NCBI RefSeq assembly: GCF_006345805.1
Contig: NC_043025.1
Location: 3,410,088 to 3,474,000, forward strand
Origin: Octopus sinensis
Lineage: Eukaryota
Length of the DNA: 63,913 nucleotides
Direction: 5' to 3'
The position numbers were made by a program, and so were the translations under genes. The notes below the pieces were generated by a model. The model was given only the letters and a program-made list of their open reading frames with translations, did no database searches and was not told the origin of the DNA. The number at the start of each line of letters is the position of its first letter. Position 1 is the first letter of the stretch. This document shows positions 10,493 to 59,453 of this stretch, in pieces.

Positions 10493-10564
10493 ATATTTGC
10501 ATGATAATCGAATAAAAAACTATGAGGATGGTGCTTTCTTATTCCTCCCCAGCATAAGTCACAT
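10493..10564 (+). CDS. aGPCR exon: single leucine-rich repeat ([25 protein letters not shown])
   Basis: tttttcAG acceptor and GTAAGT donor. Exactly 72 nt (24 aa), phase 2-2, LxxNxIxxxxxGAFxxL pattern typical of one-repeat LRR exons. Confidence 0.9.
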
Positions 10565-19200: not shown

Positions 19201-22200
19201 AGAAATCCACTGTATACATTCATAGACCATTTAAATAAACACAACAGATTACGAAGGGAAGTTATGGCATGGAAAGAAGTGAAAGAAGAAGCACAGAATT
19301 GGTGTGCCATGCCATCATTATTGTTTAGAAAAAGCAGAAAATATTTAATGATATTTCGAAAAATAAACCTTTATCATTTTATTTTCTCCTTGCTAATTAT
19401 GAACATTCACGTGCATGTCTGCCATAGAAACTAAAAAAGAATACATCTCTGTACTTCTTCAGTTTCTGCAGTGGTACATCTCCAACCTTAAAGACAGCTG
19501 GTGCGTAGAACAATCACAGCGTTCCTAGTGCCACAACGTCCCGTTTAAATGTGTTTTAGTCAGAAACAATGGCCAGGTTGTTATTACCAAACCTCCGACA
19601 CCAAAACCGCCCTAAACCACCATAAAATGGAATCATTTCAAGTGACTAATAGTCTTCTCGCTTAAAGGCACTTTATTATTCAACAATGTTAGCTAAAAGA
19701 GAACAGGAACTTTATATGGTTCCACTTTCCAGTAAAAACCATTTCACATTATTGATGCTATCAGCATCTTTTGGAAAAAATAAACCTGAATGTCATAACT
19801 TTAATAAGCTTGCTCAAATTTTATAAACCTTGTTTCTTCTTAAATCAAACAGAAGTTTCTCTTTTGATCTGAAGCGTATTCAGTTAGAGTTCTCTTTATA
19901 ATTACAGCGACCTCAAAGGCAATAAGGATTTGATGTGTGGATGTCACCTGCCAGCCTTGGTGAAATATATGAGAAATAACTATAACAGAACTGTGAATGT
20001 CAGTGGCGAGTGTCAGTCAGATCTCGGCAAAAGAATACCAATACCGAAATATTCGCAATGTACAAGTTAGTAAAATCCTCCTTGTTTCTCTTGTTCTTTT
20101 ATTATTAACACAAAGAAAATTCCGGTTATTCTCTGCAGCTCACAATATAATGTCTTACGAAACAGGAACAACAGATACAGATATAAAGAAATAAACGTTT
20201 TACCATCCACACGCTTCACATATTCTTTCTGATGCATTTAAGGAGTCAACTGTATCACACAAACCCTAATTGACACACACACACACACACACACACACAA
20301 GCACACATAATGACACACACATACACACAACAGCGCACGCAGGCATGAATGGGCATTCACATACACACATGTACAGAGACACATCCTCCTTCTAACTCAC
20401 CCTCTCTCACATACATTCTCACTCACATCCGTACGACTACATAAGCATAGAACCAGAAGATAAGATTGATATTGAAGAGGTCATGAATGGCGACAAAATG
20501 TCTCTAACAACCATAACTGGTTGAGAGAATAATTCGTTAACAAATGATTAAACAAATTGACGAATCATAAAGAAGTGAAATTGAACAAGTGCGAGCGTTT
20601 TTTATTGGCATAATGACCTCCCGGAGGTACAATAAATGCTCTAGTATTCGATCCTCAGAAAAGGGCAGCTTGGTAAGAAAGCCTACCCTCATCTATGGAC
20701 ATGAATGTTGATTAACGACCGGAAGAGTGTGATCACAAAAAAACAGAGGCCGAAATTAATTTCCTCCGAAGAAACTCTAGAATAACACTACTTGACAGGG
20801 TCCATGCTTCGGAGATGACGGCGCCTCTCCAAACCGGCAGAACATCTAAGGGCAGACCAAGAACAAGATGGTGAGATAATATCCAGTTTCAGTCGGTCCC
20901 GTTCGAGAATCCAGCCAGAAAGTGTATTGACAATTGCTTTTGATAGGACCCTATGCATGAGGTACTTCAGGACTCTATCTTCATGACCCTCACTAGAATA
21001 ATGAACATAGAGGATGAACATATGGAGGAAAATGTGCAGTGTTCGGATTAAATATGACGATCTTTATATCCCATTTTTTCAGGAAAAGCTTAAGGTATTC
21101 GTGAACAGTCAATGGCGTTGGAGAGCATAAACATAAAGTTGTAGCTGAGAAAAATTTAGCTGACATGGAGAACTGGGATCCATCTGAATATTGGAAAACA
21201 GTCACATGTATCATTATGTTTCGTACCGGTTATCAAAATGCTAACATCATGCTTGCTGCTCAATGCTTTGTGAACAATGTAAAGACTGTAAGACGTGACA
21301 TGGAGAGATTCAGCAGAAACTAGAAGCTAAAATTCGAATGCGAGAAGAAAATTATTTGAGAAGATCAAATATCAAGACAAGATAAATTCCAAGAAACAAA
21401 AGAAAAATCAGGAATATAAAAAGTCTGACAAGATGGCACACTTCATGAAGATCAAATAATGTAGACGGTTCAATCAAGGCGTTGGTACACATGTGTGAAG
21501 AGAGGGTAAGAAAATGGGTGTCAGAAGGAGGAGAGAAGAGCAAAAGTGTTTTTTTATTGGAAGAAGAGTGAACACAATTAGTGAGAGACGGAAGAAGAGC
21601 GATTGCGTGGCGGTTATGTATATGGGAGTGAAATGGTTGCAGTTGATAGCGGCCAAGCAGTAATGAAAGGTAAAAGGAGGAGAGAGACGTGAATGAGTTA
21701 GAGGTACAAACCAAAGCAAGGTTTAAGAAAGTGAATGTGTGAGAGCACATGTGTGTGTGTGTGTCTGAAGAGTAAGTGTGCATGAATATGTCTGGGTCCA
21801 TGTACCAGTGTATACTTGTTTGTATGTATGTGTAAATGATAGAAGACGCTAGGGGAAGAGGTGTGCGTGTGTGTGTGTGTGATAAAGTATGAAGAGAGTA
21901 ACTATGATGACCGAGGTGAGATGTTTGTGTGTGTAAAATCTGCGGCGTGGGCAGGAATTGAAATCAAAAGTTGTATAAGTTTTGAGATAGAAGATATACA
22001 TCACTTTCCTGAAGAAATGGAGAATCCGGTGCTGAAGGTCAACTTGAAAATCGAGAGGCGTTGGGTAGAGTGGTCGGTGAAGCGGAAACATCGAGTGACT
22101 GGTGATGCTTTGCCAAGTAGGATGACTCTATGATACTTTAAGATGTCCTTGATATTATGGGCCAGTGTTCACCTAGATCGGATCACGAACAAGCCTTGTT

Positions 22201-22951: not shown

Positions 22952-25900
22952 CATCACCGGAACTGTAAAAATCTGTACAACTCTCCACAAGTTTATCATT
23001 TATATATATACAATTATGTCTAGATTCGCAAGTGTATGCATGAGAATACATACATAGTGCAAAACATACGAATCTGTACTTATACATACATATATACATA
23101 CGTAGATACATACATGCATACATACGTAGATACATACATACATACATACATACATACATACATACATACATACCATACATACATACATACATACTACATA
23201 CATACATACATATAAAAGTACCCTGTTAATGTTGTTGAAACTCTAATGAAGAGCCTAGATTAGAAACCGGTTCTCTCCTAATTGGCAAGAAATCTTCAAA
23301 TAAAACTGAATACTGACATACATCCTTAAATTTATATATTCAAAAGAGCAGCATACTATTGCTAATGTTTTCTAATTTTATTCAAATATTTTTTGGCTCA
23401 GTTCATGCATTAAGACCATGTTTATTGTTCACATGTTTATCGTTCATAAATTAGGAAAAGGTTTATAGTCTTTGTTAATGTATAAGAACATGTTTATAGT
23501 CTTCCGTAATAATTTGGATTATATGTCTAACACGTATTAATTCCAACACTTAACACGTATATATTTGCTTCGCATCACAAAGTATTTCTTGTTATTGCTA
23601 TGCATGACACTATTTGGTTTCTAAATATGGATATTTATTTATGTTCTCTAGATTACTCGTTGTTTCAACGGAATTTACAGTGTCAGACATGTTCAGGGAT
23701 GATGTGCAATCATTCAGGAGTGACAAACTGTCCAGGAGCAGAGGTAAACCGAAATGTTACTTTCTTCTTTTCCATTAAAATATATCCACAGCCATCACTC
23801 GACAGCCAGTGTGACCAGGTAGCTTGTACTATGCTCTCGCTAATTGTTTTAGGTGCCAGTGTAAACGTAGACACCCTCTCGGTATTTTTATCCTTAACTC
23901 AATGGGACAGCAAGGATAAGACACATGAAGGGAGAGATTGATGACCATCACTAGACTGGAACTCATTTTAAGTTAAGACTGGGTCAAAGCGAAATGAGGT
24001 GCCTTGTTTAAGAACACAACGTGCCACCCTGTCCAGGAATCGAACACGCGAACTTATGAGTGATCATTGCCTGACAAACATGGTTGTACTTAGAGTGTGA
24101 TATATGAATGCATGTGACCAGGAATCAATTCGGAAACAAAGGTCTCAGTTCAATGACCTCGGAACGCTAGATATAAAAAGGGTCGTTGGAAGTTGGACGT
24201 GTCCCTACCAGCTCGCAACGATTACAGGAAGCGTTTTAATGAATTAGTTAAGCATCAGGTGACAGAAGCAACCATGAAGAACCGGTGGTAGGACGTACTT
24301 AAGGGGCCTATTAGATGAGAATCGAAAGTGTTTCGAAAAGAGCTACCAATAAAGAGGAATAGAGTGGAAAGGTGATTAGGAGAGGTGCTTGGTAAAAGCA
24401 TGGCAACCAACATTCTAGTGCTGAATTTGGCCCTCGAGCATTTCTTTAATGGAAAACAAGAAGACTGCGTTACCAGAGCAAAAGTCGTCTCTGCATTAAA
24501 ACACGAGGGAACAAACACCCACAATTTGGCCTTTGGTGGATGGAAACGGTACGTGGTACTCGGTTTCGAAGAACAGATATGTATGGCTACGGTCGAGTAT
24601 TCGGGGCCGCTAATGATTCGGAGACAATAGGCGACCTCAAGTGCCTACCTCCATGGACTACCTGCTCCAGTGAGAAGCTGATGACACTAGCTCATATACT
24701 GGAGGTGATGAGCGAAGGAAGAAGGCACAAACTGCCATGTTAAGATGGTCTGCTTTCTGAGATTTACGAATTCATGCCAGATTTGCCTGGGAAACTCTTA
24801 AAAGATAATTATCGCAACTAGCAGCAGAACGGGGGGAATTCCTAGTGGTGTGAGACTGGAGTGGCAATGCCACTAAGAAAAGGAGACACATTATACAATT
24901 TTCGGCCCATAACTTTTGCAAATTCAGAATTTAACATATGGGTAAAAATGATAGCTTTTGTTAGGGTCGTGGACATTCTTTACTTGGACGATATGCAAGA
25001 AGCGGCCGAGTTCGAACAATTTTTACAACACTTTTATTTGCTGCGATGCACAGCGACACCTACTCGGTGGTCAAAGTTTACAGCCTTTTCTCAAAGAAGG
25101 CTGCCCTCTCTCTCGCCTCACATGTAGGTGCCGGGTTTTAAGTCACAACAGCGATAGATGGAACCAGCTCAAAGATGTTCCTTTCGAACTGGAAAGTCCT
25201 TGTCAGTTTATGCGGACGATGCCATTGTCACGGTATTGGATACTACCGAAGTGAAAACAAACGGTACAATTTTAAAAGAATACGAAACGGTGGCATGCAC
25301 TAAGATCAACTTGGACAATTGAGTAGATATAAAGCTAGGCATCTGGAGAGGCAGGTGGAGAGGCTGGCGAAAAGTGTTGTGCTACCCTGGCACGGTGAAC
25401 AGCTTAAATTACTTGGCGTCTGGATATCTCCCTACGTCCAGGTGGAGAAGGACTGAAAAAAGATAAGGAGCAGCGTGGCTAGTCTTAATCAGAAATGGGC
25501 TGAAATAAAGCTGTCTCCGAAGGGTCGGGCAGTGGTGAGGAAATGTCTTATCACCTATTTTATTGATTATCACATGACCATTATGCCCTGTCCCAGCTTC
25601 TATTACACTGGATTTACTTTTCATGGAAGGGAAGGGTTCCAATTATCGAACAGCCTATCTTTGTGCAGCTCCTTCTGAAAGACGGGTTAGGAATGCTCTT
25701 GCTGCCAATGCACAGGCACGCGTTGAGGGTGTGGAGACCGATCGTGAAGCACGTTTTTTCGCGGTTCGTGTCTGTGAATGGGCTTCGGTCCTCAGTGAAC
25801 TTAAGACCAAGATTAGATTCCCGGTATCTATTATGTCATCAGGCAATCTATCCCTCTCGTAGTTGTGTAACTGAATCTGTAGACGCTCCACTCTAGCAAT

Positions 25901-28684
25901 GTAGAGGATTTGTAGCAAGGAAGAATGAATGTATCCTCCGAGAAAGTTTAGATGTCGATGGAAACAAATTGGTTACTCTGTTCAGGAGGACTTTCGGATC
26001 GAGAACTACTATGGTTAACTTCCGGAAGCCTCAGTTCAGGAAGTGCTATCAAGGCACCCTAGCTGTTCGAGCTTTTCTGAGATGCGAGCAGAGCGATAAA
26101 ACCATTCTGCACACAGTCGTTCAGTGTCAGGGAATTGCTGACTTGTAGAGTTATATCGAATAAATGTTGTGTGTAAAGCGGATCTGGCTAATGGCTGAGT
26201 CTATAAGGATTATATCCCGTCCCTCTCCTGGAACTGGGCAGAGAACATAGTTTTTCTTTGTCTTGTGGCTTTAGCGAAAGAGGTTGTTTGGTAGACGAGA
26301 TTGAAAGTTATGAGAACAGAGAAATATATAAACCTGCCAACGAAAAGATGGAAGAGGATTAAATCTTCCCTCATACCAAGTACTTCATCAAAGTCTCCAG
26401 AACATAACTGGTTGGGGATTATTTCAAGTGGAAAAGACAACACCTATATGTTTAAAACGCAGCCAAAACCCGGGTTGAAATTGCCAGACGTGTCCTGGAC
26501 AACACAGTTATACTCCAGTACATGGGTCAAAGAATCTCAAGTGAGACAATAAGAGAGACTGAAAACGACACAGAGCTATGGTTCACATCAACTGATATTG
26601 AATCGAGCCGGATATAAGCACATGGCTGCATCCCCTTCTGTTTTACTGTCTGTCCTCTTCTCAGATCTTTTTTTGTTCTCTTGAAGCTGAATTACCTTAT
26701 TTAATACTTCATTCATTTGCAATCACCAACTTTATTTGTTTTTTGAAGTTTCAGGTTCAAATTAAGGTTACACACATCTTATTTCTAACTTTGTGGTCGA
26801 TTTTTTCATTGCCTTTTATTGTTACCAGGTTTTTGCGATCATTAATTGTATTTTCGTTTTGTATCGTCCTTTTTATCTTCTAAATTTCTGGTATTTTTTC
26901 GTTTTCAGAATCTATCTTATTAAGTTAACTTGTTTGTTGAAGTCCGATACGTTTAGATCTGGGCCATTTTCTCTCCAAATTTTATACAAATATATTGTAT
27001 TTTCATTTCGTGACTATAAACTATGCTTGAGGAATAGAAGCATATTTCTCTTGCGTCCATTTTATGCATTTTCTGTTTTATTTGCTAGACTTGAGGAGTT
27101 CAGTCTGACAATTATATTTAATTATCATCTTTCTGTGCGGATGTATTAGTTTCCGTTCCTGGTGAGTTTTGCACACGTTATTGTTTTCGTAAATTTTGCG
27201 CAAAAGAAATTCCAGTGTGCATTCCTCGATTGAAAAGAAACTTGGATTGAATGATATTTTATGTTTTATTGGAATTATTTGACGAATTTAAGGTGGCGAG
27301 CTGGCAGAATCGGGAGAGCACTGGACGAGATGCTTAGCGGTATTTTGCCCGTCGTTACGTTCTGAGTTTAAATTCCACCAAGGTCGAAATTGCCTTTCAT
27401 CCTTTCGAGGTCACTAAATAAAGTTCCAGTGAGACACTGAGGTGTATGTAATCGAGTAGTCCCCTCCCCTCAAAATTTCAGACCTTGTGTCTATGATAGA
27501 AAGGATTATTTCACTAATTGTAAGTTTGATGGTTTATGACAAAGAGTTGTGATTTTAATATGGACTGTAATTCGATGGCCATGTTTATATGTGATCCGAG
27601 CGCGTTGGTATTCATGAAGCATTTCAAGAAATGTTATTTATAAATGGTAAATATCAATAAACTTTCAAAGGGGTCACTTAATCTATTATCTTACAACACT
27701 CTCGCAAATTATTTTCGGTCTTATTTACTGTTTGGGGATACATTTTGTAACAATGATTAAACTCTTTTACGTGGTAAACATCCCCAGCGTTGTAGTTGTT
27801 GTTGTTGCTGTAGTTAGCAGTAGTCGTACAAGTGAATGTCGTGGTTGTAGTATATGACTGTTATATCTATTCTTACAGCCTGTTTGTCGGTTGACTTTAT
27901 CAATGAATGGTGTTACACTGAGGTTTGAAAGGTCCTGCAGCACATACAGAAAATGCGTGGAAGCTATGAGAAACAATAGCCACAGATGCAAGAAATGGAC
28001 CGATGGCACTTCCTGTACTGGTTGTTGCGTCGGAAACTTGTGTAACAAGAATGACATCATTGGTAAGTGTTATTTATTATCTAACTACATCTGATTTATT
28101 ACACCTTAATAGTTAGTAAGAACATTGATTAATAGTTTATATATAGGAAGCTATTTTATTGTGTGCATGTGCGTGTGGCATGTGTGTGTGCAAATGTGTG
28201 TGCATGTGTGTACATATGTGTGTATGCTTTGAGATAAATTTCTTTAATTTTCCCCGAGATAAAAGTCACACAGCACTGTTTTATTTAAAGCTCCCGTTCC
28301 TGTATGGTTGCATTCTATTTACAATCGATCAGGAAAGTTTTGACTGGTGAAGTCTTGTCTCCCGCAAGGAACATATGAACTTCCGCAAAACAGGAGCGCA
28401 TATTCTATCGGGGTTGACAAATGATCGTTTATGTCTATGATAATGATGACTGAATGATTCTTCCGTTACCCTAATATATACTTTAGGTCCATTCCTGTAA
28501 TTTGATTCAATATTAATGCTATATACTATCGACTTTGCCAGACAGTTACCCTCTAGGGGGCAGTTCTAACGAATTCCGGAGGTTGCATAATACTTACTGG
28601 CCAGCCAGCTGTTTGCATCTTTTGTCGATTCAGCTTCCCAGCATTATAAGCTTTGATACAGCAACTGGAATCCTGGAATTTATG

Positions 28685-28736
<52 letters not shown>

Positions 28737-28896
28737 TATATATTCTTGATTTTTATATAATTTTCATCTGTCTTGCCCGCCTATGGTCTGGTGTTGGCTG
28801 AATTTTCTTTGGGGAACATTCTTTCTTTGTAGTTAAATCGTATGTGATCTACTTCTAGCATATGGCTGTCCACATAGTGGTTTTTTAGCCCTAAAT

Positions 28897-28936
<40 letters not shown>

Positions 28937-31387: not shown

Positions 31388-31439
<52 letters not shown>

Positions 31440-34218: not shown

Positions 34219-34281
<63 letters not shown>

Positions 34282-42211: not shown

Positions 42212-42269
<58 letters not shown>

Positions 42270-42316
42270 CTATCTATCTATCGATCGATCTGTCTGTGTG
42301 TGTGTGTGTGTGTGTG

Positions 42317-42364
<48 letters not shown>

Positions 42365-42471
42365 GATCGATCTGTCTGTCTGTGTGTGTGTGTGTGTCTG
42401 TCTGTCTTTCTGTCTATCTATCTATCTATCTATCTATCCATCTACTGTCTATCTATCTATCTATCTATCCA

Positions 42472-44392: not shown

Positions 44393-47300
44393 CGGTCGCT
44401 CTCCCTGTCTATCTATCTATCTGTCTGTCCGCCTGTCTGTCTGTCTATAGTAGGCACGACAATTTCTGTGAACTTAGGTTCGATCATAGGTTCCATCAAT
44501 AGGTCTAAACTCAGTCTTAAGAAATCTACCCGCACAAAGCTTTACAATGAACCCTATAACTCCAAAAGTGACACTAGCTCTAACATAAATATTACACCAG
44601 GTCACCCCTTGACAGTCGGGTGTGACTTAACCTCTAGCAATCGAAAATTTAATACTGATGCGTGGGGAGAGGACATGTAATGCGGGTGCGGGACATGTAA
44701 TTGTCGAATTAAGGTGTCGTGTCCCCTAGCCGGATCTTGTTTACGTAATAATGTAGTATATAAGTGTTCTGTGGAGATCTCTGCTACACAGAGGGTAAGA
44801 GATAATATAGGAAGCCCTGTAAACTTTAAATGTCAACATAGGGCCCTTCTCAACTATTTTACTAACGTAAAATATAAATTGTCCACAACGCGAGCTACGT
44901 ATACACAAGAAATTAAACTAAAATAAACATACAATACTTTTTATCTTCGTCTGTAATAGCTGAAGCACCTCCGTACAGTACACTTTTGCGTATTTGTAAA
45001 TTGTGCATTAGAGAGTCCATGAATATTCTTCGTCGATACGAGCCTACATCATTAAATAAGTTTTGGGATGCTATATTTTCTTGTAACCATAGATACCGTT
45101 CAACAATTAAATATTTTGATAAATCACGATAAACTATTAAATTTTAATTACATTTATTTCAGTTAATCTCTGTACTACTGCTATCCTGTAACTTCACTTT
45201 AATGAATTATTACCTGCTTAACATTTATTATATTTTATAAATTACATTTCCCATAATTCCTATAATAACATTTCCTCCTCCCTATATAACTAAATTTTAT
45301 CTACCCAGTAAAACATTGTACGAAATGTGAAACCCTGAATAAGATACTCTTTGATGAAGGAGGCAGTATCCAATTTTCGGAATGAAAATACTCTGTGGTT
45401 TACTGTGCCCCGGAAACAGCCGTCGGAGTATTACCACCAACGGTTTATCTAAACAGGATAACTTATTCTCATAGATTATGTAGATACGCTTTTTGAAAAA
45501 ATCCACTCTCAACGCTACGATGTTTTTTATTTGCTGTTCGGAAGACTTTATTTTATCCCCCTTTTTGTAAGCGCATATTCCATTCTTAAATAACATTTAC
45601 AACGCTGTTCTCCAGCACCTTTTAATATGACTGAAATTCTAAATATATTTTTATACATCTATATCTTTATGCATCTAGACTTTTATACATCTATATTTTT
45701 ATAATGCTTATATATCTAGCTAGCTAGATGCGTAAGCATTATATATAGGATCTAACTTCTTAAACCTATTAGTAATTTGAATCCTTTCGAGAAATATGTT
45801 AAACTTTGTTGTACAAGCTCATAAAGCTCTGGCGAGATTCTGCCCCATATAGTTGAAAATGATAACAATACTTCGCATATGACCAAATGCTTAGGATTAC
45901 GTATCCCGTAGGGGCATGAATTGAAACATATATGTAGGTTTTCGGTATCTGCCATTCCTTTTAGAGCTTTACAACTTAAGACTTATTTGTATCATTTTAA
46001 TAAAAAATATATGTGGGTTTCTGTGAATCTATGACGTGTGTCTCATTTACAAACTGTATGGTCATCTTCTGCTTTATATCCTTCCATAGGCTGGACCAAA
46101 TCCTTTGAATTCCATCTGATTTTCAAAAATCTCAACGAATATAAAATCTCTGGTGAAAACATGTCAATATCAGTGAGTAGATATCTGTCTTCTCCTTGTC
46201 TCTCTCTCCTTCTCCTCCTCTCTCTCCACACACACACACACACACACGATTTATAGAACAAATGCCAAACATCAACTAAATAATGAACTCAGTATCTTTA
46301 GTAGATAGAATTATTGATTTCGTTCAAAGACGACAGCAATTTTTGAAAGTTCACCAGATCAGCTTTTCAAAATATTATTTCCTTTCCACGAGGAAGACAA
46401 ACAGAAAATATTTTAGAAGCTAGTAAATCTATACAACTTTTAAGATAACTGTATGTTCTACAGATCAGAGATTTTATGGAGGTCGCTGGTCTTTCTACTA
46501 CTTTAATCCGTAGATTTGTATTAACCTTAAACTTTTACTTGTTTCAGTCATTAGATTGCGGCCATGCTCGGACGTGGCTTTGAAGAATTTTCGAGTCGAA
46601 TAAATCTTAATTTATTTTTAAACCTGGTACTTATTCCATCGATCTTTTGCCCAACCGCTAAGTTATGAGAGTATAAATACAGCGGCACTGGTGGGAGACA
46701 ACACAGGCACAAGCACACACACACACACACACACACACACAAGACAGGCTGCTTTCCAGTTCCTCTACTATATCCCCTTACAAGGCGTTGCCCAACATGT
46801 TACGTAGTGGGACTGAACTCAAAGGCATGTGATTGGGAAGCAAGGTTTTTACCACACAGCCACGCCTTACCTGAAATTTTCCCAGAACGATATGCTAGTT
46901 CTCCTCCAGGAGCAACGTGGTCTCACACACTACACATAGACGTAAACGTATAGGTACATAGAGATACATAAAACAGAAAGGGCAACATGTAAAAAGCAGG
47001 ACAAGAGGAAACACATGGAACAAGGAGTCACCGAAGAGGTAACAGAATGTGTGACGAAAGAGGTTTCCCAACCGTATAAACTAGAATTAATACGAAGAAA
47101 AGCTTAGATGAAGATCGAATAAATAGTGCGTGTGTTTAATTGGCAAAAAATGGATGTCCTCATGTACAACAACCTTTCATCAAAACTCTTTCAAACAAAT
47201 ACATAAAGGTATGTATATATATATAAGACACAAAGAGGGAAAAAAACTTCAGAAGGCTTGTGTTATATGGTTAAAGAATATATTTAAATCGTTATTTAGA

Positions 47301-49506: not shown

Positions 49507-49842
49507 TATATATTATATATATACAACCGATTATTGCAGATTGAGAACGAATTATCATCCTTGACGGGAACCTTCAGTGTTGAATATTGCAAGTAAGCAA
49601 AAACGTTTTTCACTTTTATTCAAATTTATTTATTTTTGCCTCAAAGAATCCAGAGTTATTTTTATCGAATGTATTAAATATTGCAATACTTAACAATGCT
49701 GTATTTGTGAACCACACTATACAAAATTTATTCTGCCAATCAAATGGCAAAGCGTTTTATCATGCAAAAGGCAATCACATACACGTATAGACGTACTGAG
49801 CGAAAATTTTCTCTCTCTCTCTCTCTCTAAATGTATACACAC

Positions 49843-54324: not shown

Positions 54325-54606
54325 GTATGTATATATGTATGTATGTATCAATGTATGTACGTATGTATTTATTAATTTTTATTTCAGTTCAGCAGAACGG
54401 AAAAATATATTTACTATATACAGTGAGGTGGTCAGAAATGTTACTAAAGATGAGCTGAGGCACAACATATATAATGTTATAAATTCATCCAAGACGCTGC
54501 AGGATTTGGAAATTCAACAGCAGAATATAGAATTAATTGATGAAAGTAGGACATAATTTTCTTATTATTTCTATCACAATTACCTTCATACTATTGCTAA
54601 CACAAT

Positions 54607-56496: not shown

Positions 56497-58985
56497 TTAC
56501 TACTAGTGGCTTTTACCATATACATGTTTTGCTTCTTTTCCAGGGTCTTGTAATGAAGACACAACCTCAAATAATGGTATTTTCCATTGGCCAGTGACGA
56601 AAATAGGAAGCAATGCGACGATTCCATGCCATGCAAATGTAGCAACGAGACTCTGGTTCGTTTCTATTGTTTCATTTCTTCTCAGAATCTGTAGTTTTCT
56701 GTGTCATCATATTATGAGAGAATGTTACATGGTAGAGGAAATAAAACGCCAAGAGAGATTAAGATGACGAGATTAATGTCCTTCGGTTGAAATCGCTTGT
56801 CAACAATTTTACATTTTATATGTTTTATATATTATATGTTTTATATATTATGTATTTTATGTATTATGTGTTTTATATATTATGTGTTTTGTAAGTGTTT
56901 TATATATTATGTGACACAATTTTGCTTTGGTCTAACTTCCAAGATTTGATTTGTTGCCAATATTAGACAAAGATTGAAGGCAAACTGGCAGAATCGTTAA
57001 CTCGTCAGGCGAAATGTTTAGCAGCGCTTCGTCTGTCTTTATGTTCTGATATCAAATTCCGTCGAGGTTAACTTTGCCTTTTCTCCGTAGGAATCGATAA
57101 AATATGCCCCTTTTGAGCATTGGGGTAGGTGCAATAGACTTAGCCTCCCCTCCAAAATGGTTGGTCTTGTGCCAACATTTGAAAGCAATATTTAACAAAA
57201 CATCAGCTCGTCCAGTTGGAAAATTCATTTTATATTTATTTTGAGGATCGGAATCTGGAATAAATAATAGACGTCTTACAAAAACGCATTACACTATTTA
57301 CTCTTCTTTCACTAGATTATGAGTTCAAATCCCAACCAGGTCTATGATCTCTTCATTACTCTGAGATTGATGAGAGAATGTCTTACATTTATTTTTTCAG
57401 TTCTTCCAGGACGGTGAAGCATCCAGAAATGGCATCAAACCAATCTAGGACATCACTAAAATGTTCACCATTTACTGGTATCTGGCAAGAACCAGACATG
57501 TCACAATGTTACAATACTGAGGGGATCACTCGACGACTAAAAGACATCAGAAGCCAAGACATTGATCAAAGTAAGCGAGTGATTATGATTCGAAATACTT
57601 TTACTGTATATGTATGTGTCTTTGCATTTCTCCTTCCTTACGACCACCATATACGTGTGTGTTTGTTGCTAATTAATATTTTATCTTTCAAGCGGTAGCA
57701 CCCTTTTCAGTTCTCCAGCAATATATTCATCTCGTCCAATTGCAGATCAATTGATTCACTTATGGAATCGTTATGACACATTTTATTAATTAGGAGAGTT
57801 GCGTCTATTTTTATATCGTTAAAACTACTCCTTCCTTAACTTTCTGCCGATGGGCTGACTACATAGAGAAGTAGAAAAACAACAAAGATAGTTACTGGTA
57901 CATACTTCTCCGCATACATTATGTTGGGTTATAAATCTACAATGACGCTGTCCACATAGCTGTTTATCATAGAAAATGAGCAATTTACCACTCTCAAGTG
58001 TTATTATGCGCTGTAAAATTGAAGATATTTTCATAGGCACACAGTCATTTGATGACTTCACTTTCTTTTAAAAATCTTGATGAAAACCTTTCAATTTTAC
58101 TCTTTAGATTGAGGAAGTGAGGTGGCAGAATCGTTAGCAGGTCGGGTGAAGGAAGTGCTTGGCGGCATTTCGTCTGTCTTCACTTTCTGAGTTCAAATTC
58201 CGCTGAGGTTCACTTTATCTTTCATCCTTTCGGAGTCGAGCATTGGGGGTCAATGTAACTGACTTACACCCTCCCCCACAATTGCTGGCCTTGTGTCAAA
58301 ATTTGAAGCCAATATTATTCCTTAGAACAGCGACCCTTTTTCGTTTAGATTCACCTTGGCATTGGAAAAATAATTGCGTTGAAATTAATGGCGGTTTATG
58401 ATGGTTGGTGTATCGCAGTTCATTGATTGTCAATGATATTACGTACAAACACCCTTCCACCACCGTCAAGTGTCTGCCTTACTCACCTATAAAGGGATCC
58501 CTAGTGTTGCGTAACTGCCCCGCTGTTCCAGTTAATGTTACAGTGCAGGGGCCCCTAAGACTGTATAACGATGAACTGAACAACCGATGAACTGAACACA
58601 TTAAGTTCCTTAAAGCTGGAGTCGTTAATTAACTTCCGGTGATTCATTAATTGTTTTGTGACATTTAATTTGCGTTTAATGTTTGAACTCAAATCGATTG
58701 TAATTCCATTAAATTTCATGTTAAATTTTTCATTGCAGGGAATATCGCCAATATTTCGAAAGAGGCATTGAATGTTTCGCAGAAATCAGTGTATTTCAAA
58801 CAACAAGATATTGACTTGGCTGTAGATATTCTCGAGAAAATTGTGCCATTGAACGCATCGGCTGACACAAGACTGAAAATTATACGTGGTATAAACAATA
58901 TAATAAACACACCAGAGAAGGTTTTGGCTGAGGCAGAACTATCTAATAGAAGTATCAGCAGGTAATATTCAAATCTGTTTTCTGT

Positions 58986-59021: not shown

Positions 59022-59453
59022 AAAGAAGAAGAAGAAGAAGAAGAAGAAGAAGAAGAAAGAGAGAGAAAAAGAAAAGTAGCAGTAGCCGAAGCCATATTTG
59101 GAGCGGCACAAATAATAAAATTTGCTGCATCAACGCTAACCTAGCAACAACGAAAGTAGTAGAAGCATCAGTAGCATACAAGCCTTGTTAGCTAAGCTAA
59201 TTAGTGTAATTACACCTATAGCTAATTACGTATTAGAAGCACACTGTTAATTAAAAATCGTTTTCTTGATTTTCTCTTCAGAATGCTGGGCATTATAAAA
59301 ATATTGCCAAAAACAATTCCACTGGAAGAGCAGCAAGTCAACGTTTTATACTCAAATCTTGGTATTGGTGTTTCCAAAGTGAATCAGGATAGTTTCGATG
59401 GTCTTTTCTATGGCGTTTCCTACGGAACTAATGAAACGGAAGCAAACACACAG
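10493..59453 (+). CDS. Partial multi-exon adhesion GPCR (LRR-LRRCT-LU/three-finger-like-SEA-like-HRM-GAIN), 11 exons in window
   Basis: Manual splicing of 10493-10564, 19908-20065, 23652-23743, 27879-28062, 46090-46172, 49540-49592, 54388-54545, 56544-56655, 57401-57570, 58739-58961 and 59282-59453. All introns are GT..AG, phases chain 2-2-1-0-1-0-2-1-2-1-2-0 with no stop, and the protein has 15 NxS/T sequons. The HRM motif (C..WPxT..G..AtipC..R.C..GiW.ePDmSqC) is followed by GAIN-A-like helices resembling ADGRG2/G4/G6. Confidence 0.88.
10858..11401 (-). mobile_element. Mariner transposon 3' half (TIR at left end)
   Basis: [22 protein letters not shown] and [16 protein letters not shown] on the minus strand; TIR gggtcatcccataaataatgc. 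Confidence 0.9.
11402..12720 (+). mobile_element. Gypsy pol fragment (RT/RNase H), degenerate
   Basis: [58 protein letters not shown] and VASNAS..GI motifs. Confidence 0.9.
12720..13085 (-). mobile_element. R4/Dong-like LINE 3' fragment (RLE domain)
   Basis: [24 protein letters not shown]...[21 protein letters not shown]. Confidence 0.85.
13361..13790 (+). mobile_element. Two tandem degenerate tRNA-derived SINE copies (13361-~13540, ~13574-13790)
   Basis: ggcgagctggcagaa..gttagc head, gagttcaaattc B-box and cctttcatc..gataaattaagtaccag core, matching the intact copy at 41488-41717. Confidence 0.8.
13980..14583 (+). mobile_element. Mariner transposon 5' half (TIR at left end)
   Basis: TIR ctgggtcatcccataaataatgcg; [46 protein letters not shown]. 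Confidence 0.9.
14584..15560 (-). mobile_element. Gypsy gag/protease-RT fragment, including an inverted copy of 11402-12001
   Basis: 14584-15164 is the reverse complement of 11402-12001 with scattered substitutions and one ~19-nt indel, then continues into upstream protease-like sequence. Confidence 0.85.
15570..17040 (-). mobile_element. Penelope-like element (RT to GIY-YIG), degenerate; same family as 35485-36690
   Basis: [36 protein letters not shown]....RIRVYK.A and GIY-YIG remnants on the minus strand. Confidence 0.85.
18290..19130 (-). mobile_element. R4/Dong-like LINE RT fragment
   Basis: [26 protein letters not shown] and MEFGVSRCA motifs. Confidence 0.85.
19908..20065 (+). CDS. aGPCR exon: LRR C-terminal cap ([52 protein letters not shown])
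   Basis: ctctttataattacAG acceptor and GTTAGT donor. 158 nt, phase 2-1, DLxGN then CxC...C...C four-cysteine LRRCT pattern. Confidence 0.9.
20640..22140. mobile_element. Degenerate RTE-like LINE fragments (about 20640-21240 minus, about 21340-22140 plus)
   Basis: Broken YGSE(T/M)W-like, GRP..RW.D.I and YL(K/S)YLGS-like remnants; heavily decayed. Confidence 0.5.
22560..22780 (+). repeat. Dispersed repeat also present at 39348-39782 (both orientations) and about 46940-47200
   Basis: Shared string aaaatgaccat(t/c)ccgaaatacaacaat..tgtttcaacac..cttcacat. Confidence 0.7.
23652..23743 (+). CDS. aGPCR exon: first part of LU/three-finger-like domain ([31 protein letters not shown])
   Basis: ttatgttctctAG acceptor and GAG/GTAAAC donor. 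92 nt, phase 1-0, opens with the CxxC typical of LU domains. Confidence 0.85.
24190..26620 (+). mobile_element. Degenerate L1/Tx1-like LINE (ORF2 remnants)
   Basis: [24 protein letters not shown]-like and 3' [17 protein letters not shown] remnants homologous to 42841-43457. Confidence 0.7.
27290..27510 (+). mobile_element. tRNA-derived SINE
   Basis: aaggtggcgagctggcagaatcg head and cctttcatcctttcgaggtc core. Confidence 0.85.
27879..28062 (+). CDS. aGPCR exon: second part of LU/three-finger-like domain (PVCRLTLS...[17 protein letters not shown])
   Basis: ctattcttacAG acceptor and G/GTAAGT donor. 184 nt, phase 0-1, ends in the CCxxxxCN signature of Ly6/uPAR domains. Confidence 0.9.
28940..29578 (+). 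mobile_element. Non-autonomous Helitron-like (Lep1/HINE-type) element, family A
   Basis: 5' tactagcagtatcgcccggcgttgctcggg and 3' acagacactcacacaactacagttttatatatatagat; inverted copy at 53683-54207. Confidence 0.65.
29660..30182 (-). mobile_element. Mariner fragment (5' portion)
   Basis: [48 protein letters not shown]. Confidence 0.85.
31630..31693 (-). ncRNA. Type-I hammerhead ribozyme motif with intact core
   Basis: Minus strand: CCAC CUGAAGA AUGUCU-(25 nt)-AGACAU GAAA C-GAUC-G UA GUGG. Stem I 4 bp, stem II 6 bp, palindromic helix III, GUA cleavage triplet. Confidence 0.8.
32718..33597 (-). mobile_element. Internally deleted mariner with both TIRs and TA target duplication
   Basis: TA-ttgagtcatcccattaataatgcg ... 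cgcaatatttatggtacgacccaa-TA; HTH and HPPYSPD/DYHLF remnants. Confidence 0.9.
34341..37840. mobile_element. Penelope-like element with a 5' inversion and ~1.15-kb inverted terminal arms
   Basis: Arms 34341-35484 and 36668-37840 are reverse complements. Minus-strand RT piece 35485-35658 ([10 protein letters not shown]). Plus strand 35659-36686: [12 protein letters not shown], thumb, [21 protein letters not shown] with one frameshift near 36400. Confidence 0.9.
37868..39135 (+). mobile_element. Non-autonomous Helitron-like element, family B
   Basis: actagcattatgacccgg 5' end, internal sequence shared with 51216-52398, and 3' gtaaggcatgtgtaaaatttgaatgaaattg..acacagaca. Confidence 0.6.
39348..39782. 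repeat. ~205-bp fold-back inverted repeat with 24-nt spacer
   Basis: 39348-39553 is the reverse complement of 39578-39782 with scattered mismatches. Confidence 0.9.
39830..40772 (+). mobile_element. Gypsy integrase remnant, PPT, LTR (40493-40760) and PBS-like sequence
   Basis: [24 protein letters not shown] motif; ttaaaggggaga-TGTAG...AACA followed by gtggcgatgagg. Confidence 0.75.
40790..42210. mobile_element. RTE-clade LINE, 5' truncated with inversion (minus 40790-42000, plus 42000-42210)
   Basis: Minus: [15 protein letters not shown]-terminus and [23 protein letters not shown]. Plus: TNGVK and RAKSKVKE...[11 protein letters not shown] segment. Confidence 0.85.
41488..41717 (-). mobile_element. 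Full-length tRNA-derived SINE with a perfect 14-bp TSD
   Basis: gtcaacctaatact at 41474-41487 and 41718-41731; head aaggcggcgagctggcagaaacgttagcacgccgggcgaaatgcg; B-box gagttcaaattccgcc. Confidence 0.92.
42212..44450 (+). mobile_element. 5'-truncated Tx1/L1-like LINE (42841-43920) embedded in a (TCTA)n tract
   Basis: Open zf-RVT-like [39 protein letters not shown] ending at 43457; pyrimidine-rich 3' UTR; AATAAA at 43912; (TCTA)n on both sides. Confidence 0.88.
44450..44930 (+). mobile_element. Penelope-like GIY-YIG fragment
   Basis: [26 protein letters not shown] motif. Confidence 0.7.
45290..45960 (-). mobile_element. Possible highly degenerate Penelope-like RT fragment
   Basis: Weak resemblance of minus-strand ORFs to PLE RT motif 3 region; no clean motif. 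Confidence 0.35.
46090..46172 (+). CDS. aGPCR exon: SEA-like module part 1 ([28 protein letters not shown])
   Basis: tatccttccatAG acceptor and GTGAGT donor. 83 nt, phase 1-0, the phase needed to link exon 4 to exon 6. Confidence 0.75.
47386..48970 (+). mobile_element. Full-length inactive Tc1-family transposon with long IR/DR termini and TA TSD
   Basis: TA-cagctgcggccaaaatg...cattttggccgcaactg-TA; ~220-bp TIRs; [24 protein letters not shown] and SPDLNP motifs; stops and frameshifts. Confidence 0.95.
49430..50130. repeat. (TA)n/(TG)n/(TATG)n microsatellite cluster surrounding exon 6
   Basis: Direct dinucleotide and tetranucleotide runs. Confidence 0.9.
49540..49592 (+). CDS. aGPCR exon: SEA-like module part 2 ([18 protein letters not shown])
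   Basis: ttattgcAG acceptor (weak pyrimidine tract) and AA/GTAAGC donor. 53 nt, phase 0-2, bridges its neighbours in frame. Confidence 0.7.
51216..52398 (+). mobile_element. Non-autonomous Helitron-like element, family B, second copy
   Basis: 5' hairpin ctagcattatgacccg/cgggtcatagtgctag, homology to 37868-39135, internally duplicated 3' block and acagacagac..ttttatatata end. Confidence 0.65.
53683..54207 (-). mobile_element. Non-autonomous Helitron-like element, family A, inverted copy
   Basis: Reverse complement of 28940-29578 with internal indels. Confidence 0.7.
54388..54545 (+). CDS. aGPCR exon: SEA-like module part 3 ([52 protein letters not shown])
   Basis: ttttatttcAG acceptor and A/GTAGGA donor. 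158 nt, phase 2-1, amphipathic beta-alpha-beta pattern. Confidence 0.8.
56544..56655 (+). CDS. aGPCR exon: HRM domain part 1 ([38 protein letters not shown])
   Basis: gcttcttttccAG acceptor and TG/GTTCGT donor. 112 nt, phase 1-2, C..WPxT..G....C HRM motif. Confidence 0.92.
56977..57195 (+). mobile_element. tRNA-derived SINE (degenerate) in the 745-nt intron between the HRM exons
   Basis: ggcaaactggcagaatcgttaac..caaattccgtcgagg..tttgccttt. Confidence 0.75.
57401..57570 (+). CDS. aGPCR exon: HRM part 2 and start of GAIN ([10 protein letters not shown]...[31 protein letters not shown])
   Basis: attttttcAG acceptor and A/GTAAGC donor. 170 nt, phase 2-1, GxWxxPDxSxC motif. Confidence 0.92.
58118..58320 (+). 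mobile_element. tRNA-derived SINE (degenerate)
   Basis: gaggtggcagaatcgttagcagg..gagttcaaattccgctgagg..ctttcatcctttcgg. Confidence 0.8.
58739..58961 (+). CDS. aGPCR exon: GAIN subdomain A helices ([35 protein letters not shown]...AELSNRSIS)
   Basis: tttttcattgcAG acceptor and AG/GTAATA donor. 223 nt, phase 1-2, DIxxxVxxLEKIV and NxxxxxxxxL helical pattern of ADGRG-type GAIN-A. Confidence 0.9.
59282..59453 (+). CDS. aGPCR exon: end of GAIN-A and start of GAIN-B ([58 protein letters not shown])
   Basis: tttctcttcAG acceptor and CAG/GTACCA donor. 172 nt, phase 2-0, NL(G/A)IxV...FxGL strand motif. Confidence 0.9.

What the first reader, a model, noticed from the sequence alone, without database searches (positions are those of the whole stretch)
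23652..28062. 12-cysteine Ly6/uPAR (three-finger)-like domain fused inside a GPCR
Seen: CQTC-x4-C-x7-C-x6-C...C-x5-C...C...C-xx-CC-x4-CN, 12 Cys in about 80 aa. Known: LU domains end in CCxxxxCN, usually have 8-10 Cys, and mostly occur as GPI-anchored or secreted modulators (Lynx1, Drosophila Quiver/Sleepless, snake three-finger toxins) or in TGF-beta receptor ectodomains. Inference: a tethered toxin-like fold on a GPCR with an extra disulfide could bind ion channels/nAChR-type proteins or TGF-beta-like ligands.
Basis: partly seen in the sequence, partly recalled or inferred. Interest (0 to 1): 0.72.

Follow-up and report, generated by a model that had tools for sequence, protein, structure and literature searches.

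The report
Lynx2-type Ly6 domain in octopus adhesion GPCR
Two exons of an octopus gene encode a 12-cysteine Ly6/uPAR ("three-finger") module in the outer part of an adhesion G-protein-coupled receptor; this domain was missed in the octopus-expanded receptor family, but the same combination has been reported in starfish.

Summary
Window 23652-23743 and 27879-28062 (+ strand) are two ag/gt-bounded exons encoding a 92-residue module with 12 Cys ending in CCxxxxCN.

All 12 Cys are kept in 32 of 38 distinct octopus copies. A family profile finds human LYPD1/Lynx2 at E=8e-5, and every PDB sequence hit below E=10 is a three-finger protein. The Cys framework equals the six-disulfide Lynx2/LYPD6 type, so the "extra disulfide" is not new. 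Pfam misses the domain. AlphaFold2 gave a low-confidence model, so the fold is not confirmed.

The two exons are flanked by phase-1 introns and read in frame with neighbouring exons. Upstream lie an LRR and an LRRCT exon. Downstream lie a ferredoxin/SEA-like module, HormR and the start of GAIN.

No 7TM exon is in the window. The orthologous O. vulgaris locus continues into GPS and TM1. Full-length relatives, including one transcript contig, carry signal peptide, LRR, LU, GPS and 7tm_2.

No independent GPI-anchored transcript is supported. The family is the octopus-specific adhesion-GPCR expansion of Ritschard 2019, where LU went unnoticed. LU-bearing adhesion GPCRs were already noted in starfish. 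Ligand specificity (nAChR, TGF-beta) is untested. Verdict: real, a new member of a known kind, moderate interest.

The parts
10493..10564 (+). 72-bp leucine-rich-repeat exon (..[23 protein letters not shown]..), the last LRR before LRRCT. It starts after one base of a split codon and ends with two bases that join 19908.
   Evidence: tblastn hits from 25 family proteins. ag/gt boundaries and 72-bp length. 12/73 mismatches to the O. sinensis orthologous locus over 10491-10563.
19908..20065 (+). LRRCT exon ([52 protein letters not shown]), the C-terminal cap of the LRR module.
   Evidence: tblastn. Splice sites and phase. It follows LRR_8 hits in the homologues.
23652..23743 (+). LU exon 1: (N)[30 protein letters not shown]. 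It holds Cys 1-4 (loop I with its extra disulfide) and is entered from a phase-1 intron.
   Evidence: 0/92 differences from the O. sinensis orthologue.
23744..27878 (+). 4.1-kb intron between the two LU exons. It holds a decayed stretch with a YADD motif, which Pfam does not confirm as reverse transcriptase, and a dispersed SINE-like repeat at 27286-27500.
27879..28062 (+). LU exon 2: PVCRLTLS...[16 protein letters not shown](G). It holds Cys 5-12 (loops II and III, the CCxxxxCN end) and leaves into a phase-1 intron.
   Evidence: 4/184 differences from the O. sinensis orthologue.
46090..46172 (+). Exon 1 of a roughly 98-residue ferredoxin/SEA-like module ([28 protein letters not shown]).
   Evidence: tblastn. 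Phase. AF2 on the P0006 homologue gives beta-alpha-beta-beta-alpha-beta at pLDDT 70-85. Foldseek hits are ferredoxin-like folds at weak E.
49540..49592 (+). Exon 2 of the ferredoxin/SEA-like module ([17 protein letters not shown]).
54388..54545 (+). Exon 3 of the ferredoxin/SEA-like module ([53 protein letters not shown]).
   Evidence: The acceptor was chosen by frame and by alignment to the homologues.
56544..56655 (+). HormR-like exon 1 ([36 protein letters not shown]).
   Evidence: Sub-threshold Pfam HRM hits in homologues P0006, P0015 and P0078.
57401..57570 (+). HormR-like exon 2 ([57 protein letters not shown]).
   Evidence: Acceptor as in RefSeq model P0008. 0/170 differences from the orthologue.
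58739..58961 (+). First GAIN-domain exon.
   Evidence: PF26588 (ADGRA2/3 GAIN) is precomputed for homologues.
59282..59453 (+). Second GAIN-domain exon, the last exon of the gene recognised in the window. The next GAIN exon, GPS and TM1 lie beyond position 63913.

Best explanation
The two exons encode a Lynx2-type, six-disulfide Ly6/uPAR (LU) module. It is an internal extracellular domain of an adhesion GPCR.

The domain order is signal peptide, LRRNT, LRRs, LRRCT, LU, a ferredoxin/SEA-like module, HormR, GAIN/GPS, then a 7TM closest to ADGRG6/G2.

The gene belongs to the tandemly expanded, octopus-specific adhesion-GPCR family (Ritschard 2019, 'group 3'). The same LRRCT, LU and SEA-like arrangement occurs in a scallop protein. 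LU-bearing adhesion GPCRs are also reported in starfish.

The LU module has the canonical mobile-module structure of two exons between phase-1 introns. This fits acquisition by exon shuffling.

Inferred mechanism (not shown): together with the LRR module, the LU domain forms the partner-binding head of the receptor. Its finger tips vary most among paralogues and would set binding specificity. Engagement of a partner in trans or in cis would be passed through the SEA-like/HormR/GAIN stalk to the tethered agonist after the HL|T GPS site, which then activates the 7TM.
For: LU identity:
- The framework is C-x2-C...CC-x4-CN with 12 Cys. Among 38 distinct LU segments, 32 keep all 12 and the rest have 11. 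In the wider family alignment 11 Cys columns are invariant and the twelfth nearly so.
- All 12 Cys align in register with human LYPD1/Lynx2, PDB 6zss.
- A profile of 14 GPCR-embedded copies finds LYPD1 at E=8.1e-5. All 12 PDB sequence hits below E=10 are three-finger proteins.
- An exhaustive HMMER search of 1.84 billion proteins found a sea-cucumber protein at E=1.4e-5. Its repeats pass the Pfam CD59 and Toxin_TOLIP cut-offs.
- hhalign between the family profile and those repeats gives 94.8% probability, E=5e-8.
- The module is two exons flanked by phase-1 introns, the canonical LU gene structure (PMC6600238).
- The low-confidence AF2 secondary structure (strands 33-40 and 43-50, helix 51-63) matches the Lynx2 NMR elements (loop II hairpin 31-39/42-50, helix 51-61; PMC7582953).

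Part of a GPCR gene:
- One open frame runs through 11 ag/gt exons from LRR to GAIN.
- The orthologous O. sinensis locus L002 is 95-97% identical including introns. It adds a signal-peptide/LRRNT exon.
- The orthologous O. vulgaris locus L003 continues into GPS (CSCDHLTSFALLM) and TM1.
- Full-length relatives P0080, P0081 and P0085 carry LRR, the LU module, GPS and 7tm_2, as does P0082. P0006 carries LRR, LU and 7tm_2 without a GPS hit.
- P0082 comes from a 4.2-kb contig with an uninterrupted ORF, so it is a spliced mRNA.

Diversification and context:
- Sequence entropy is highest in the three loops (1.07-1.14 bits, against 0.39-0.69 in the N-terminal, head and C-terminal segments). N-glycosylation sequons at N63 (30/38) and N73 (24/38) are common.
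- Ritschard 2019 reports LRR in 5 of 22 members, one Death domain, and expression in axial nerve cord, suckers and skin. P0081 carries a Death domain.
Against: - No Pfam LU model reaches its threshold in any of 21 members. The best values are Activin_recp E=0.047, Toxin_TOLIP 0.93 and UPAR_LY6_2 1.2.
- Two AlphaFold2 runs gave pLDDT of only 33-52 per 10-residue block (mean 41.8) for the LU part. Foldseek on the LU-only model was meaningless. The three-finger fold and the disulfide map are therefore inferred by homology, not shown.
- The window has no GPS or 7TM exon.
- At the orthologous O. vulgaris locus only TM1 was seen in the 12 kb available downstream. An intact 7TM at this particular locus is not demonstrated.
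- RefSeq models of the family are fragmentary and sometimes chimeric, with 2-3 tandem LU copies in P0009, P0013 and P0077.
- Nothing here tests binding or signalling.
Confidence: 0.8

Rival explanations
1. The LU exons also, or mainly, serve short non-GPCR products. One option is a soluble LRR-LRRCT-LU protein made by retaining the intron after 28062 or by early polyadenylation. The other is the reader's independent small LU protein.
For: - Read-through after 28062 stops after 9 codons ([10 protein letters not shown]).
- RefSeq models P0001-P0003 (151-160 aa) end in exactly such read-through. Several LRR+LU models (P0042, P0043, P0061) end within about 45 residues after the LU domain.
Against: - The short models start at MMCGCHLP inside LRRCT and have no signal peptide.
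- Their tails are not hydrophobic GPI signals.
- Among the 28 proteins found by the exhaustive profile search, no octopus protein has a signal peptide, LU and GPI layout.
- The splice phases fit the neighbouring exons.
- Transcript P0082 carries LU and 7TM together.
- A soluble LRR-LU isoform would add to the receptor form rather than replace it.
Confidence: 0.15
2. The module is not an LU/three-finger domain. It would be another small disulfide-rich fold whose cysteine spacing resembles LU by convergence.
For: - Pfam LU models are all sub-threshold.
- AF2 confidence is low and Foldseek is uninformative.
- Cys-rich profiles can inflate HMM scores.
Against: - All 12 Cys align with Lynx2 with only three short gaps.
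- Every PDB sequence hit is a three-finger protein.
- The hhalign probability to Pfam-validated LU repeats is 94.8%.
- The module has the canonical two-exon, phase-1 structure.
- The C-terminal CCxxxxCN motif is present.
Confidence: 0.04
3. This locus is a decaying duplicate in a tandem array. The LU exons would then be relics without a working receptor behind them.
For: - The family is tandemly duplicated, and many models are partial.
- No signal-peptide exon or further LRR exons were found in the first 10 kb of the window.
- No 7TM exons beyond TM1 were seen in the 12 kb downstream at the O. vulgaris orthologue.
- The LRR and SEA-like exons differ from the O. sinensis orthologue by 6-16%, more than the introns do.
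Against: - All 11 exons in the window are open, in frame and bounded by ag/gt.
- The LU and HormR exons are more conserved than the introns.
- The O. sinensis orthologue has an intact signal-peptide/LRRNT exon and a RefSeq model spanning LRR to GAIN.
- Introns here are long (up to 18 kb), so the missing exons may simply lie outside the sequence in hand.
Confidence: 0.05

Closest known systems
Starfish LU-bearing adhesion-GPCR-like proteins: Asterias rubens LyAr2 (XP_033635706.1, 'ADGRG2-like', 1113 aa, LU at 224-305), XP_033635539.1 ('ADGRG6-like', 1022 aa, LU at 186-244), and A. planci LyAp2
   Same: - A single Lynx2/LYPD6-like LU domain about 190-300 residues from the N-terminus of a signal-peptide-bearing, 7-TM, adhesion-type receptor of about 1000-1150 aa.
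- The same NCBI naming (ADGRG6/G2-like) (PMC9410279, PMC11595613).
   Different: - A different phylum.
- Starfish have two such genes. Octopus has dozens in tandem arrays.
- The domains flanking LU in the starfish proteins were not described, and their sequences could not be fetched here. Orthology is therefore untested.
Human LYPD1 (Lynx2), PDB 6zss; also LYPD6 and LYPD6B
   Same: - The same 12-Cys, six-disulfide framework: four core bonds plus one each in loops I and III.
- A matching predicted hairpin and helix pattern.
- The best PDB sequence match (E=8.1e-5).
   Different: - Lynx2 is a free-standing GPI-anchored protein that modulates nAChRs.
- The octopus module has no signal peptide or GPI signal of its own and is an internal domain of a multidomain receptor.
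- Sequence similarity is low outside the Cys framework.
Octopus-specific adhesion-GPCR expansion, 'group 3' of Ritschard et al. 2019 (PMC6408891)
   Same: [quoted passage not shown]
   Different: That study used InterProScan and reported no LU domain. Here the LU module appears, wherever the N-terminal region is included in the model, in 45 of the 76 database proteins retrieved.
Vertebrate ADGRG6 (GPR126) and ADGRA2/3 (GPR124/125)
   Same: - The 7TM/GAIN-proximal region of full-length relative P0082 is closest to ADGRG6 (E=4e-66) and ADGRG2.
- The SEA-like, HormR, GAIN order resembles ADGRG6.
- The LRR, LRRCT...HormR, GAIN order and PF26588 GAIN hits resemble ADGRA2/3.
   Different: - ADGRG6 has CUB and PTX where this family has LRR, LRRCT and LU.
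- ADGRA2/3 have an Ig domain where this family has LU plus the SEA-like module.
- No vertebrate adhesion GPCR is known to carry an LU domain (own knowledge; also stated in PMC11595613).
Drosophila Belly roll (Bero), a GPI-anchored LU protein acting as cis-ligand of the GPCR AstC-R2 (bioRxiv 10.64898/2026.06.29.735401)
   Same: An LU domain held at the membrane next to a GPCR and acting on it in cis. This is a functional precedent for LU-to-GPCR coupling.
   Different: - They are separate polypeptides.
- The receptor is a rhodopsin-class neuropeptide receptor.
- No covalent fusion and no GAIN/tethered-agonist machinery are involved.

Membership tests
Ly6/uPAR (LU, three-finger) domain | Cysteine framework: N-terminal CxxC, four core disulfide pairs, C-terminal CC-x4-CN | tested here: met
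   The window has C-x2-C...CC-x4-CN with 12 Cys. All 12 align with Lynx2 Cys 3, 6, 15, 24, 32, 49, 55, 66, 75, 78, 79, 84. 32 of 38 distinct copies keep all 12.
Ly6/uPAR (LU, three-finger) domain | Gene structure: mature domain on two exons flanked by phase-1 introns (PMC6600238) | tested here: met
   The exons are 92 and 184 bp, 276 bp in total (92 codons). The introns on both sides are phase 1 (review text).
Ly6/uPAR (LU, three-finger) domain | Statistically significant sequence or profile similarity to established LU domains | tested here: met
   Family profile A3 against PDB sequences gives LYPD1 at E=8.1e-5, and all 12 hits are three-finger proteins. Profile A2 against 1.84e9 proteins finds Pfam-validated LU repeats at E=1.4e-5. 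hhalign gives 94.8%, E=5e-8.
Ly6/uPAR (LU, three-finger) domain | Match to a Pfam LU model (PF00021, PF16975, PF00087, PF01064, PF25152) above the gathering score | tested here: not met
   The window segment gives UPAR_LY6_2 at E=4.5 and 7.9 bits against a cut-off of 31.5. Over 21 members the best values are Activin_recp 0.047, Toxin_TOLIP 0.93 and UPAR_LY6_2 1.2.
Ly6/uPAR (LU, three-finger) domain | Three-finger beta-structural fold | tested here: inconclusive
   The two AF2 runs gave mean pLDDT 41.8 for the LU-only model and 33-45 per block for the LU part of the second. Foldseek on the LU-only model was uninformative. Only the secondary-structure pattern resembles Lynx2.
Ly6/uPAR (LU, three-finger) domain | Disulfide connectivity 1-5, 2-3, 4-6, 7-10, 8-9, 11-12 (Lynx2 type) | not testable with these tools
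   The connectivity is inferred only from the register with Lynx2. It needs mass-spectrometric disulfide mapping or a structure.
Free-standing GPI-anchored or secreted LU protein (Lynx1/2, Sleepless type) | Own signal peptide upstream, and a GPI-attachment signal or stop directly after the LU domain | tested here: not met
   LU exon 1 is entered in frame from the LRRCT exon, and LU exon 2 continues in frame into further exons. The read-through tail [10 protein letters not shown] is not a GPI signal.
Adhesion GPCR | GAIN domain with GPS autoproteolysis motif (HL|T/S) directly before the 7TM | tested here: met
   The window holds the first two GAIN exons. The orthologous locus L003 has the GPS exon CSCDHLTSFALLM. 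Pfam GPS is found in P0010, P0016, P0020, P0079-P0082, P0085 and P0086.
Adhesion GPCR | Secretin-type seven-transmembrane domain (PF00002) on the same polypeptide as the ectodomain | tested here: inconclusive
   This holds for the family: P0006, P0080-P0082 and P0085 carry LU plus 7tm_2, and P0082 comes from an mRNA contig. For this locus, no 7TM exon is in the window, and only TM1 is seen at the O. vulgaris orthologue.
ADGRA2/3 (GPR124/125) subfamily | LRR, LRRCT, Ig-like domain, HormR, GAIN | tested here: not met
   LRR, LRRCT and a GAIN of ADGRA type (PF26588) are present, with only sub-threshold HRM hits. No Ig domain was found in any member. LU plus a SEA-like module sits in that position. 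The 7TM is closer to ADGRG6/G2.
ADGRG6 (GPR126) subfamily | CUB, pentraxin, SEA, HormR, GAIN ectodomain | tested here: not met
   No CUB or PTX hits were found. The SEA-like assignment rests only on a moderate-confidence beta-alpha-beta-beta-alpha-beta model and weak ferredoxin-fold matches. 7TM similarity is highest to ADGRG6.
TGF-beta/activin receptor ectodomain | LU-type ectodomain followed by a single TM and a Ser/Thr kinase; Pfam Activin_recp | tested here: not met
   Activin_recp is sub-threshold (best E=0.047, 5 of 21 members). ACVR1 and TGFBR1 score E 0.15-1.6. No kinase is present, and the downstream domains are HormR, GAIN and 7TM.

The most novel reading that the evidence does not exclude
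The Lynx2-type LU head makes these octopus-expanded adhesion GPCRs partners or modulators of Cys-loop receptors. Candidates are neuronal nAChRs or the octopus-expanded, nAChR-derived chemotactile receptors of the suckers (own knowledge, not checked in the papers read here). Binding could be in cis or in trans. This would couple ionotropic contact chemosensation or cholinergic transmission to G-protein signalling.

A variant reading is that the LU domain acts as a built-in cis-ligand on the receptor's own 7TM or GAIN, as free Bero does on AstC-R2.

Nothing here excludes either idea. Support is circumstantial: Lynx2 and starfish Lystar5 act on nAChRs (PMC9410279), the family is expressed in suckers, skin and axial nerve cord (PMC6408891), and variation is concentrated in the finger tips.
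Probability: 0.07. Interest if true: 0.8.

Novelty: new member of a known kind. Interest (0 to 1): 0.4.

Why it matters
- The LU domain is not part of the standard adhesion-GPCR domain repertoire. The 2019 LU review lists secreted, GPI-anchored and TGF-beta-receptor forms and never mentions GPCRs.
- Domain databases miss the domain in this family. The published analysis of the octopus adhesion-GPCR expansion did not see it.
- Recognising it gives that expansion a defined, diversifying binding head made of LRR plus a Lynx2-type LU. The expansion is expressed in suckers, skin and arm nerve cord.
- It links the octopus genes to the LU-bearing receptors noted in starfish. That suggests an old bilaterian LU-adhesion-GPCR lineage that vertebrates lack.
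- It suggests concrete partners to test, such as Cys-loop receptors and Wnt co-receptors, by analogy with Lynx2 and LYPD6.
- It also shows that RefSeq names such as 'slit-like', 'toll-like receptor 5', 'decorin-like' or 'LYPD1-like' for these octopus models label fragments of one receptor family.

Tried and rejected
- Pfam on the window segment, on 21 family members and on full-length homologues: no LU model above threshold.
- AlphaFold2 on the LU alignment. The result was pLDDT 41.8, and Foldseek against PDB gave only noise, mostly small GTPases.
- Second AlphaFold2 job on LU plus the next module (P0006 118-306). LU was again low. Only the SEA-like part reached pLDDT 70-85. Foldseek hits were ferredoxin-like folds at E>=0.015 with no SEA entry.
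- Third word-indexed homologue search, with the LU alignment: only the five short proteins already known.
- Search for more LRR exons or a signal-peptide exon in window 1-10,400, by tblastn and an LRR regex: nothing convincing.
- ARAGORN for a tRNA-derived SINE in the LU intron: no tRNA call.
- pN/pS between the window and the O. sinensis orthologue: too few differences in the LU exons (3 counted) to be informative.
- Supplements of the two starfish papers: accession numbers only, no sequences. Orthology with LyAr2 could not be tested.
- Rejected: an independent GPI-anchored LU gene, a TGF-beta-receptor-type ectodomain, and membership of ADGRA or ADGRG6 in the strict sense (see the membership test).

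Full report
**1. The observation**

The window is eukaryotic, AT-rich and full of microsatellites and transposon debris. At the stated coordinates there are two + strand exons with canonical splice sites: 23652-23743 (92 bp) and 27879-28062 (184 bp).

Joined, they encode (N)[30 protein letters not shown]|[61 protein letters not shown](G). The rest of the span (23744-27878) is intron.

**2. The pattern is real and constrained**

A database search with the peptide, and then with a longer gene model, returned 76 proteins, all from Octopus sinensis, O. vulgaris and O. bimaculoides. Thirty-eight distinct full-length copies of the module were compared: the window plus 37 database segments, at 62-99% identity to the window. 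Thirty-two of them keep all 12 Cys and the rest have 11.

In an alignment that also includes Argonauta, an unidentified cephalopod transcript and a scallop protein (down to 29% identity), 11 Cys columns are invariant and the twelfth is nearly so. Sequence entropy is highest in the three loops (1.07-1.14 bits) and lowest in the N-terminal, head and C-terminal segments (0.39-0.69). N-glycosylation sequons at positions 63 and 73 are common.

The orthologous O. sinensis locus (L002) is colinear with the window at 95-97% identity including introns. It has 0/92 and 4/184 differences in the two exons.

**3. Is it an LU domain?**

Pfam says nothing significant. The window segment gives UPAR_LY6_2 at E=4.5. 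Over 21 members the best values are Activin_recp 0.047, Toxin_TOLIP 0.93 and UPAR_LY6_2 1.2. All the weak hits are three-finger families, but none passes.

Profile searches do better.
- A profile of close paralogues finds human LYPD1/Lynx2 (PDB 6zss) at E=0.095, followed by ACVR1 ectodomains.
- A broader profile built only from GPCR-embedded copies finds LYPD1 at E=8.1e-5. All 12 PDB sequences below E=10 are three-finger proteins: LYPD6, LYPD6B, SLURP-1, LYNX1, ACVR1, TGFBR1 and several snake three-finger toxins.
- An exhaustive HMMER search of 1.84 billion representative proteins gave only 28 hits. One is a sea-cucumber protein with four repeats (E=1.4e-5) that pass the Pfam CD59 and Toxin_TOLIP cut-offs and have the same 12-Cys framework.
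- hhalign between the octopus family and those repeats gives 94.8% probability, E=5e-8.

All 12 Cys align in register with Lynx2. Its NMR structure has four invariant disulfides plus one each in loops I and III (PMC7582953). By homology the octopus pairs would be C11-C34, C14-C19, C27-C51, C57-C80, C68-C77 and C81-C86, numbered in the 93-residue segment. So the 'extra disulfide' is the known Lynx2/LYPD6 subtype.

The gene structure fits as well. The module is two exons, 276 bp or 92 codons, flanked by phase-1 introns. The Ploug-group review gives this as the canonical, mobile LU arrangement (PMC6600238).

Two AlphaFold2 runs with the shallow paralogue alignment gave pLDDT of about 33-52 per 10-residue block on the LU part, and Foldseek returned noise. 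The predicted secondary structure (hairpin 33-40/43-50, helix 51-63) does coincide with Lynx2's loop II hairpin and its unusual long helix 51-61. That is a hint, not proof.

**4. The gene around it**

Mapping homologues onto the window gives 11 ag/gt-bounded exons in one open frame:

| Exon(s) | Module |
|---|---|
| 10493-10564 | LRR (72 bp) |
| 19908-20065 | LRRCT (CGCHLPALV...) |
| 23652-23743, 27879-28062 | LU |
| 46090-46172, 49540-49592, 54388-54545 | 98-residue module |
| 56544-56655, 57401-57570 | HormR-like |
| 58739-58961, 59282-59453 | GAIN (start) |

The LU, middle and HormR modules are each multiples of three bases between phase-1 introns. This is the classic layout for exon shuffling and for in-frame cassette skipping. 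The RefSeq model P0008 of the orthologous locus indeed joins LU directly to HormR.

The middle module is predicted at pLDDT 70-85 as beta-alpha-beta-beta-alpha-beta. It matches ferredoxin-like folds only weakly. Its position equals that of SEA in ADGRG6.

The window contains no GPS or 7TM exon. Three lines of evidence place the LU module in a GPCR gene all the same.
- L002 adds a signal-peptide/LRRNT exon and another LRR exon upstream, and the next GAIN exon just past the window end.
- The O. vulgaris orthologous locus L003 (87-94% identical) continues into the GPS exon (CSCDHLTSFALLM) and TM1.
- Full-length relatives carry everything on one chain. P0080 (1010 aa), P0081 (1283 aa, plus a Death domain) and P0085/P0098 (annotated ADGRA3) have LRR, LU, GPS and 7tm_2. 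P0082 (1155 aa) has signal peptide, LRRNT, LRRs, LRRCT, LU, GPS and 7tm_2. P0082 is encoded by an uninterrupted ORF on a 4.2-kb contig, so it is a spliced mRNA.

The 7TM of P0082 is closest to ADGRG6 (E=4e-66) and ADGRG2 among solved structures. Several GAIN regions hit the ADGRA2/3 GAIN model. No member has Ig, CUB or pentraxin domains.

**5. The independent-transcript rival**

Short RefSeq models (P0001-P0003) begin inside LRRCT without a signal peptide. They end in read-through of the intron after the LU exon. In the window that read-through would add [10 protein letters not shown] and then stop, which is not a GPI signal. They look like fragments.

At most they hint at truncated, possibly soluble LRR-LU isoforms existing alongside the receptor. 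No octopus protein with a signal peptide, LU and GPI layout turned up.

**6. What is known**

Ritschard et al. 2019 described an octopus-specific, co-localised expansion of adhesion GPCRs ('group 3'). It has GPS and 7TM, LRR in 5 of 22 members and a Death domain in one. It is related to two scallop receptors and is expressed in axial nerve cord, suckers and skin. The paper does not mention an LU domain (PMC6408891). The present family matches that description.

Independently, the Lyukmanova/Shenkarev group noted that two Asterias rubens proteins carry one N-terminal LU domain most similar to Lynx2. These are LyAr2 (XP_033635706.1, 'ADGRG2-like', 1113 aa, LU 224-305) and XP_033635539.1 ('ADGRG6-like', 1022 aa). 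A. planci LyAp2 was noted as well. The authors state that the human homologue lacks such a domain (PMC9410279, PMC11595613).

In the searchable library, that is the only paper linking 'LU domain' with adhesion GPCRs. The 2019 LU review lists no GPCR form. The combination is therefore already on record in echinoderms. Its presence in molluscs, and throughout the octopus expansion, appears not to be.

**7. Mechanism (inferred)**

The LU module, together with the LRR arc, most likely forms the partner-binding head of the receptor, and its finger tips diversify among paralogues. Partner engagement would act through the SEA-like/HormR/GAIN stalk on the tethered agonist that follows the HL|T site.

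Which partner is unknown. Possibilities include Cys-loop receptors by analogy with Lynx2, LRP6-type co-receptors by analogy with LYPD6, integrins as proposed for starfish Lystar5, or the receptor's own 7TM, as with Bero and AstC-R2.

**8. Verdict**

- It is a new member of a known kind, of moderate interest.
- No step needed referral.

Noticed in passing
window 46090-46172, 49540-49592, 54388-54545: The roughly 98-residue module between LU and HormR has no Pfam hit. AF2 on homologue P0006 predicts beta-alpha-beta-beta-alpha-beta at pLDDT 70-85, and it matches ferredoxin-like folds weakly. It is a phase 1-1 cassette of 294 bp that RefSeq model P0008 skips. It sits where ADGRG6 has its SEA domain.
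   Followed up: partly
window 10493-10564, 46090-46172 and 49540-49592, compared with L002: The LRR exon and the first two exons of the SEA-like module differ from the O. sinensis orthologous locus by 15-16%, and the third SEA-like exon by 6%. The surrounding introns differ by about 4-5%, and the LU and HormR exons by 0-2.7%. This suggests gene conversion between tandem paralogues or fast evolution of these exons.
   Followed up: partly
P0009, P0013 and P0077 (database models of paralogous loci): Some RefSeq models carry two or three LU modules in tandem at about 72-75% identity. These could be real tandem exon-pair duplications, mutually exclusive alternative exons, or fused neighbouring genes. 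The window has only one LU exon pair.
   Followed up: no
window 28063-46089: The intron after the LU exon is 18 kb in the window. The same interval is only about 2.5 kb in the O. sinensis orthologue (L002, about 32440 to 34942). The extra sequence includes long microsatellite tracts and a zf-RVT-containing retroelement fragment at 42750-43454.
   Followed up: partly
window 27286-27500, 41551-41716 (- strand), 58119-58232: A dispersed SINE-like repeat of about 110-215 bp has three copies at 73-80% identity. One copy lies in the intron between the two LU exons. ARAGORN calls no tRNA in it.
   Followed up: partly
window 120-437, 11829-12164, 14094-14486, 48122-48541: The introns hold transposon fragments: two reverse-transcriptase pieces (RVT_1), a sub-threshold Mos1-type HTH hit, and a DDE_3 (Tc1/mariner-type) transposase piece.
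   Followed up: partly
P0081/P0093 (O. bimaculoides paralogue): One family member has a C-terminal cytoplasmic Death domain after the 7TM (Pfam E about 1e-6). This is an unusual tail for an adhesion GPCR and was also noted by Ritschard 2019.
   Followed up: no
database names of P0013, P0025, P0027, P0042, P0043, P0055, P0062 and P0002: Fragmentary RefSeq models of this receptor family are named 'slit-like', 'toll-like receptor 5', 'LRRC15-like', 'chaoptin', 'decorin-like' or 'LYPD1-like' after whichever domain the fragment contains. These names are misleading for gene-family counts.
   Followed up: partly
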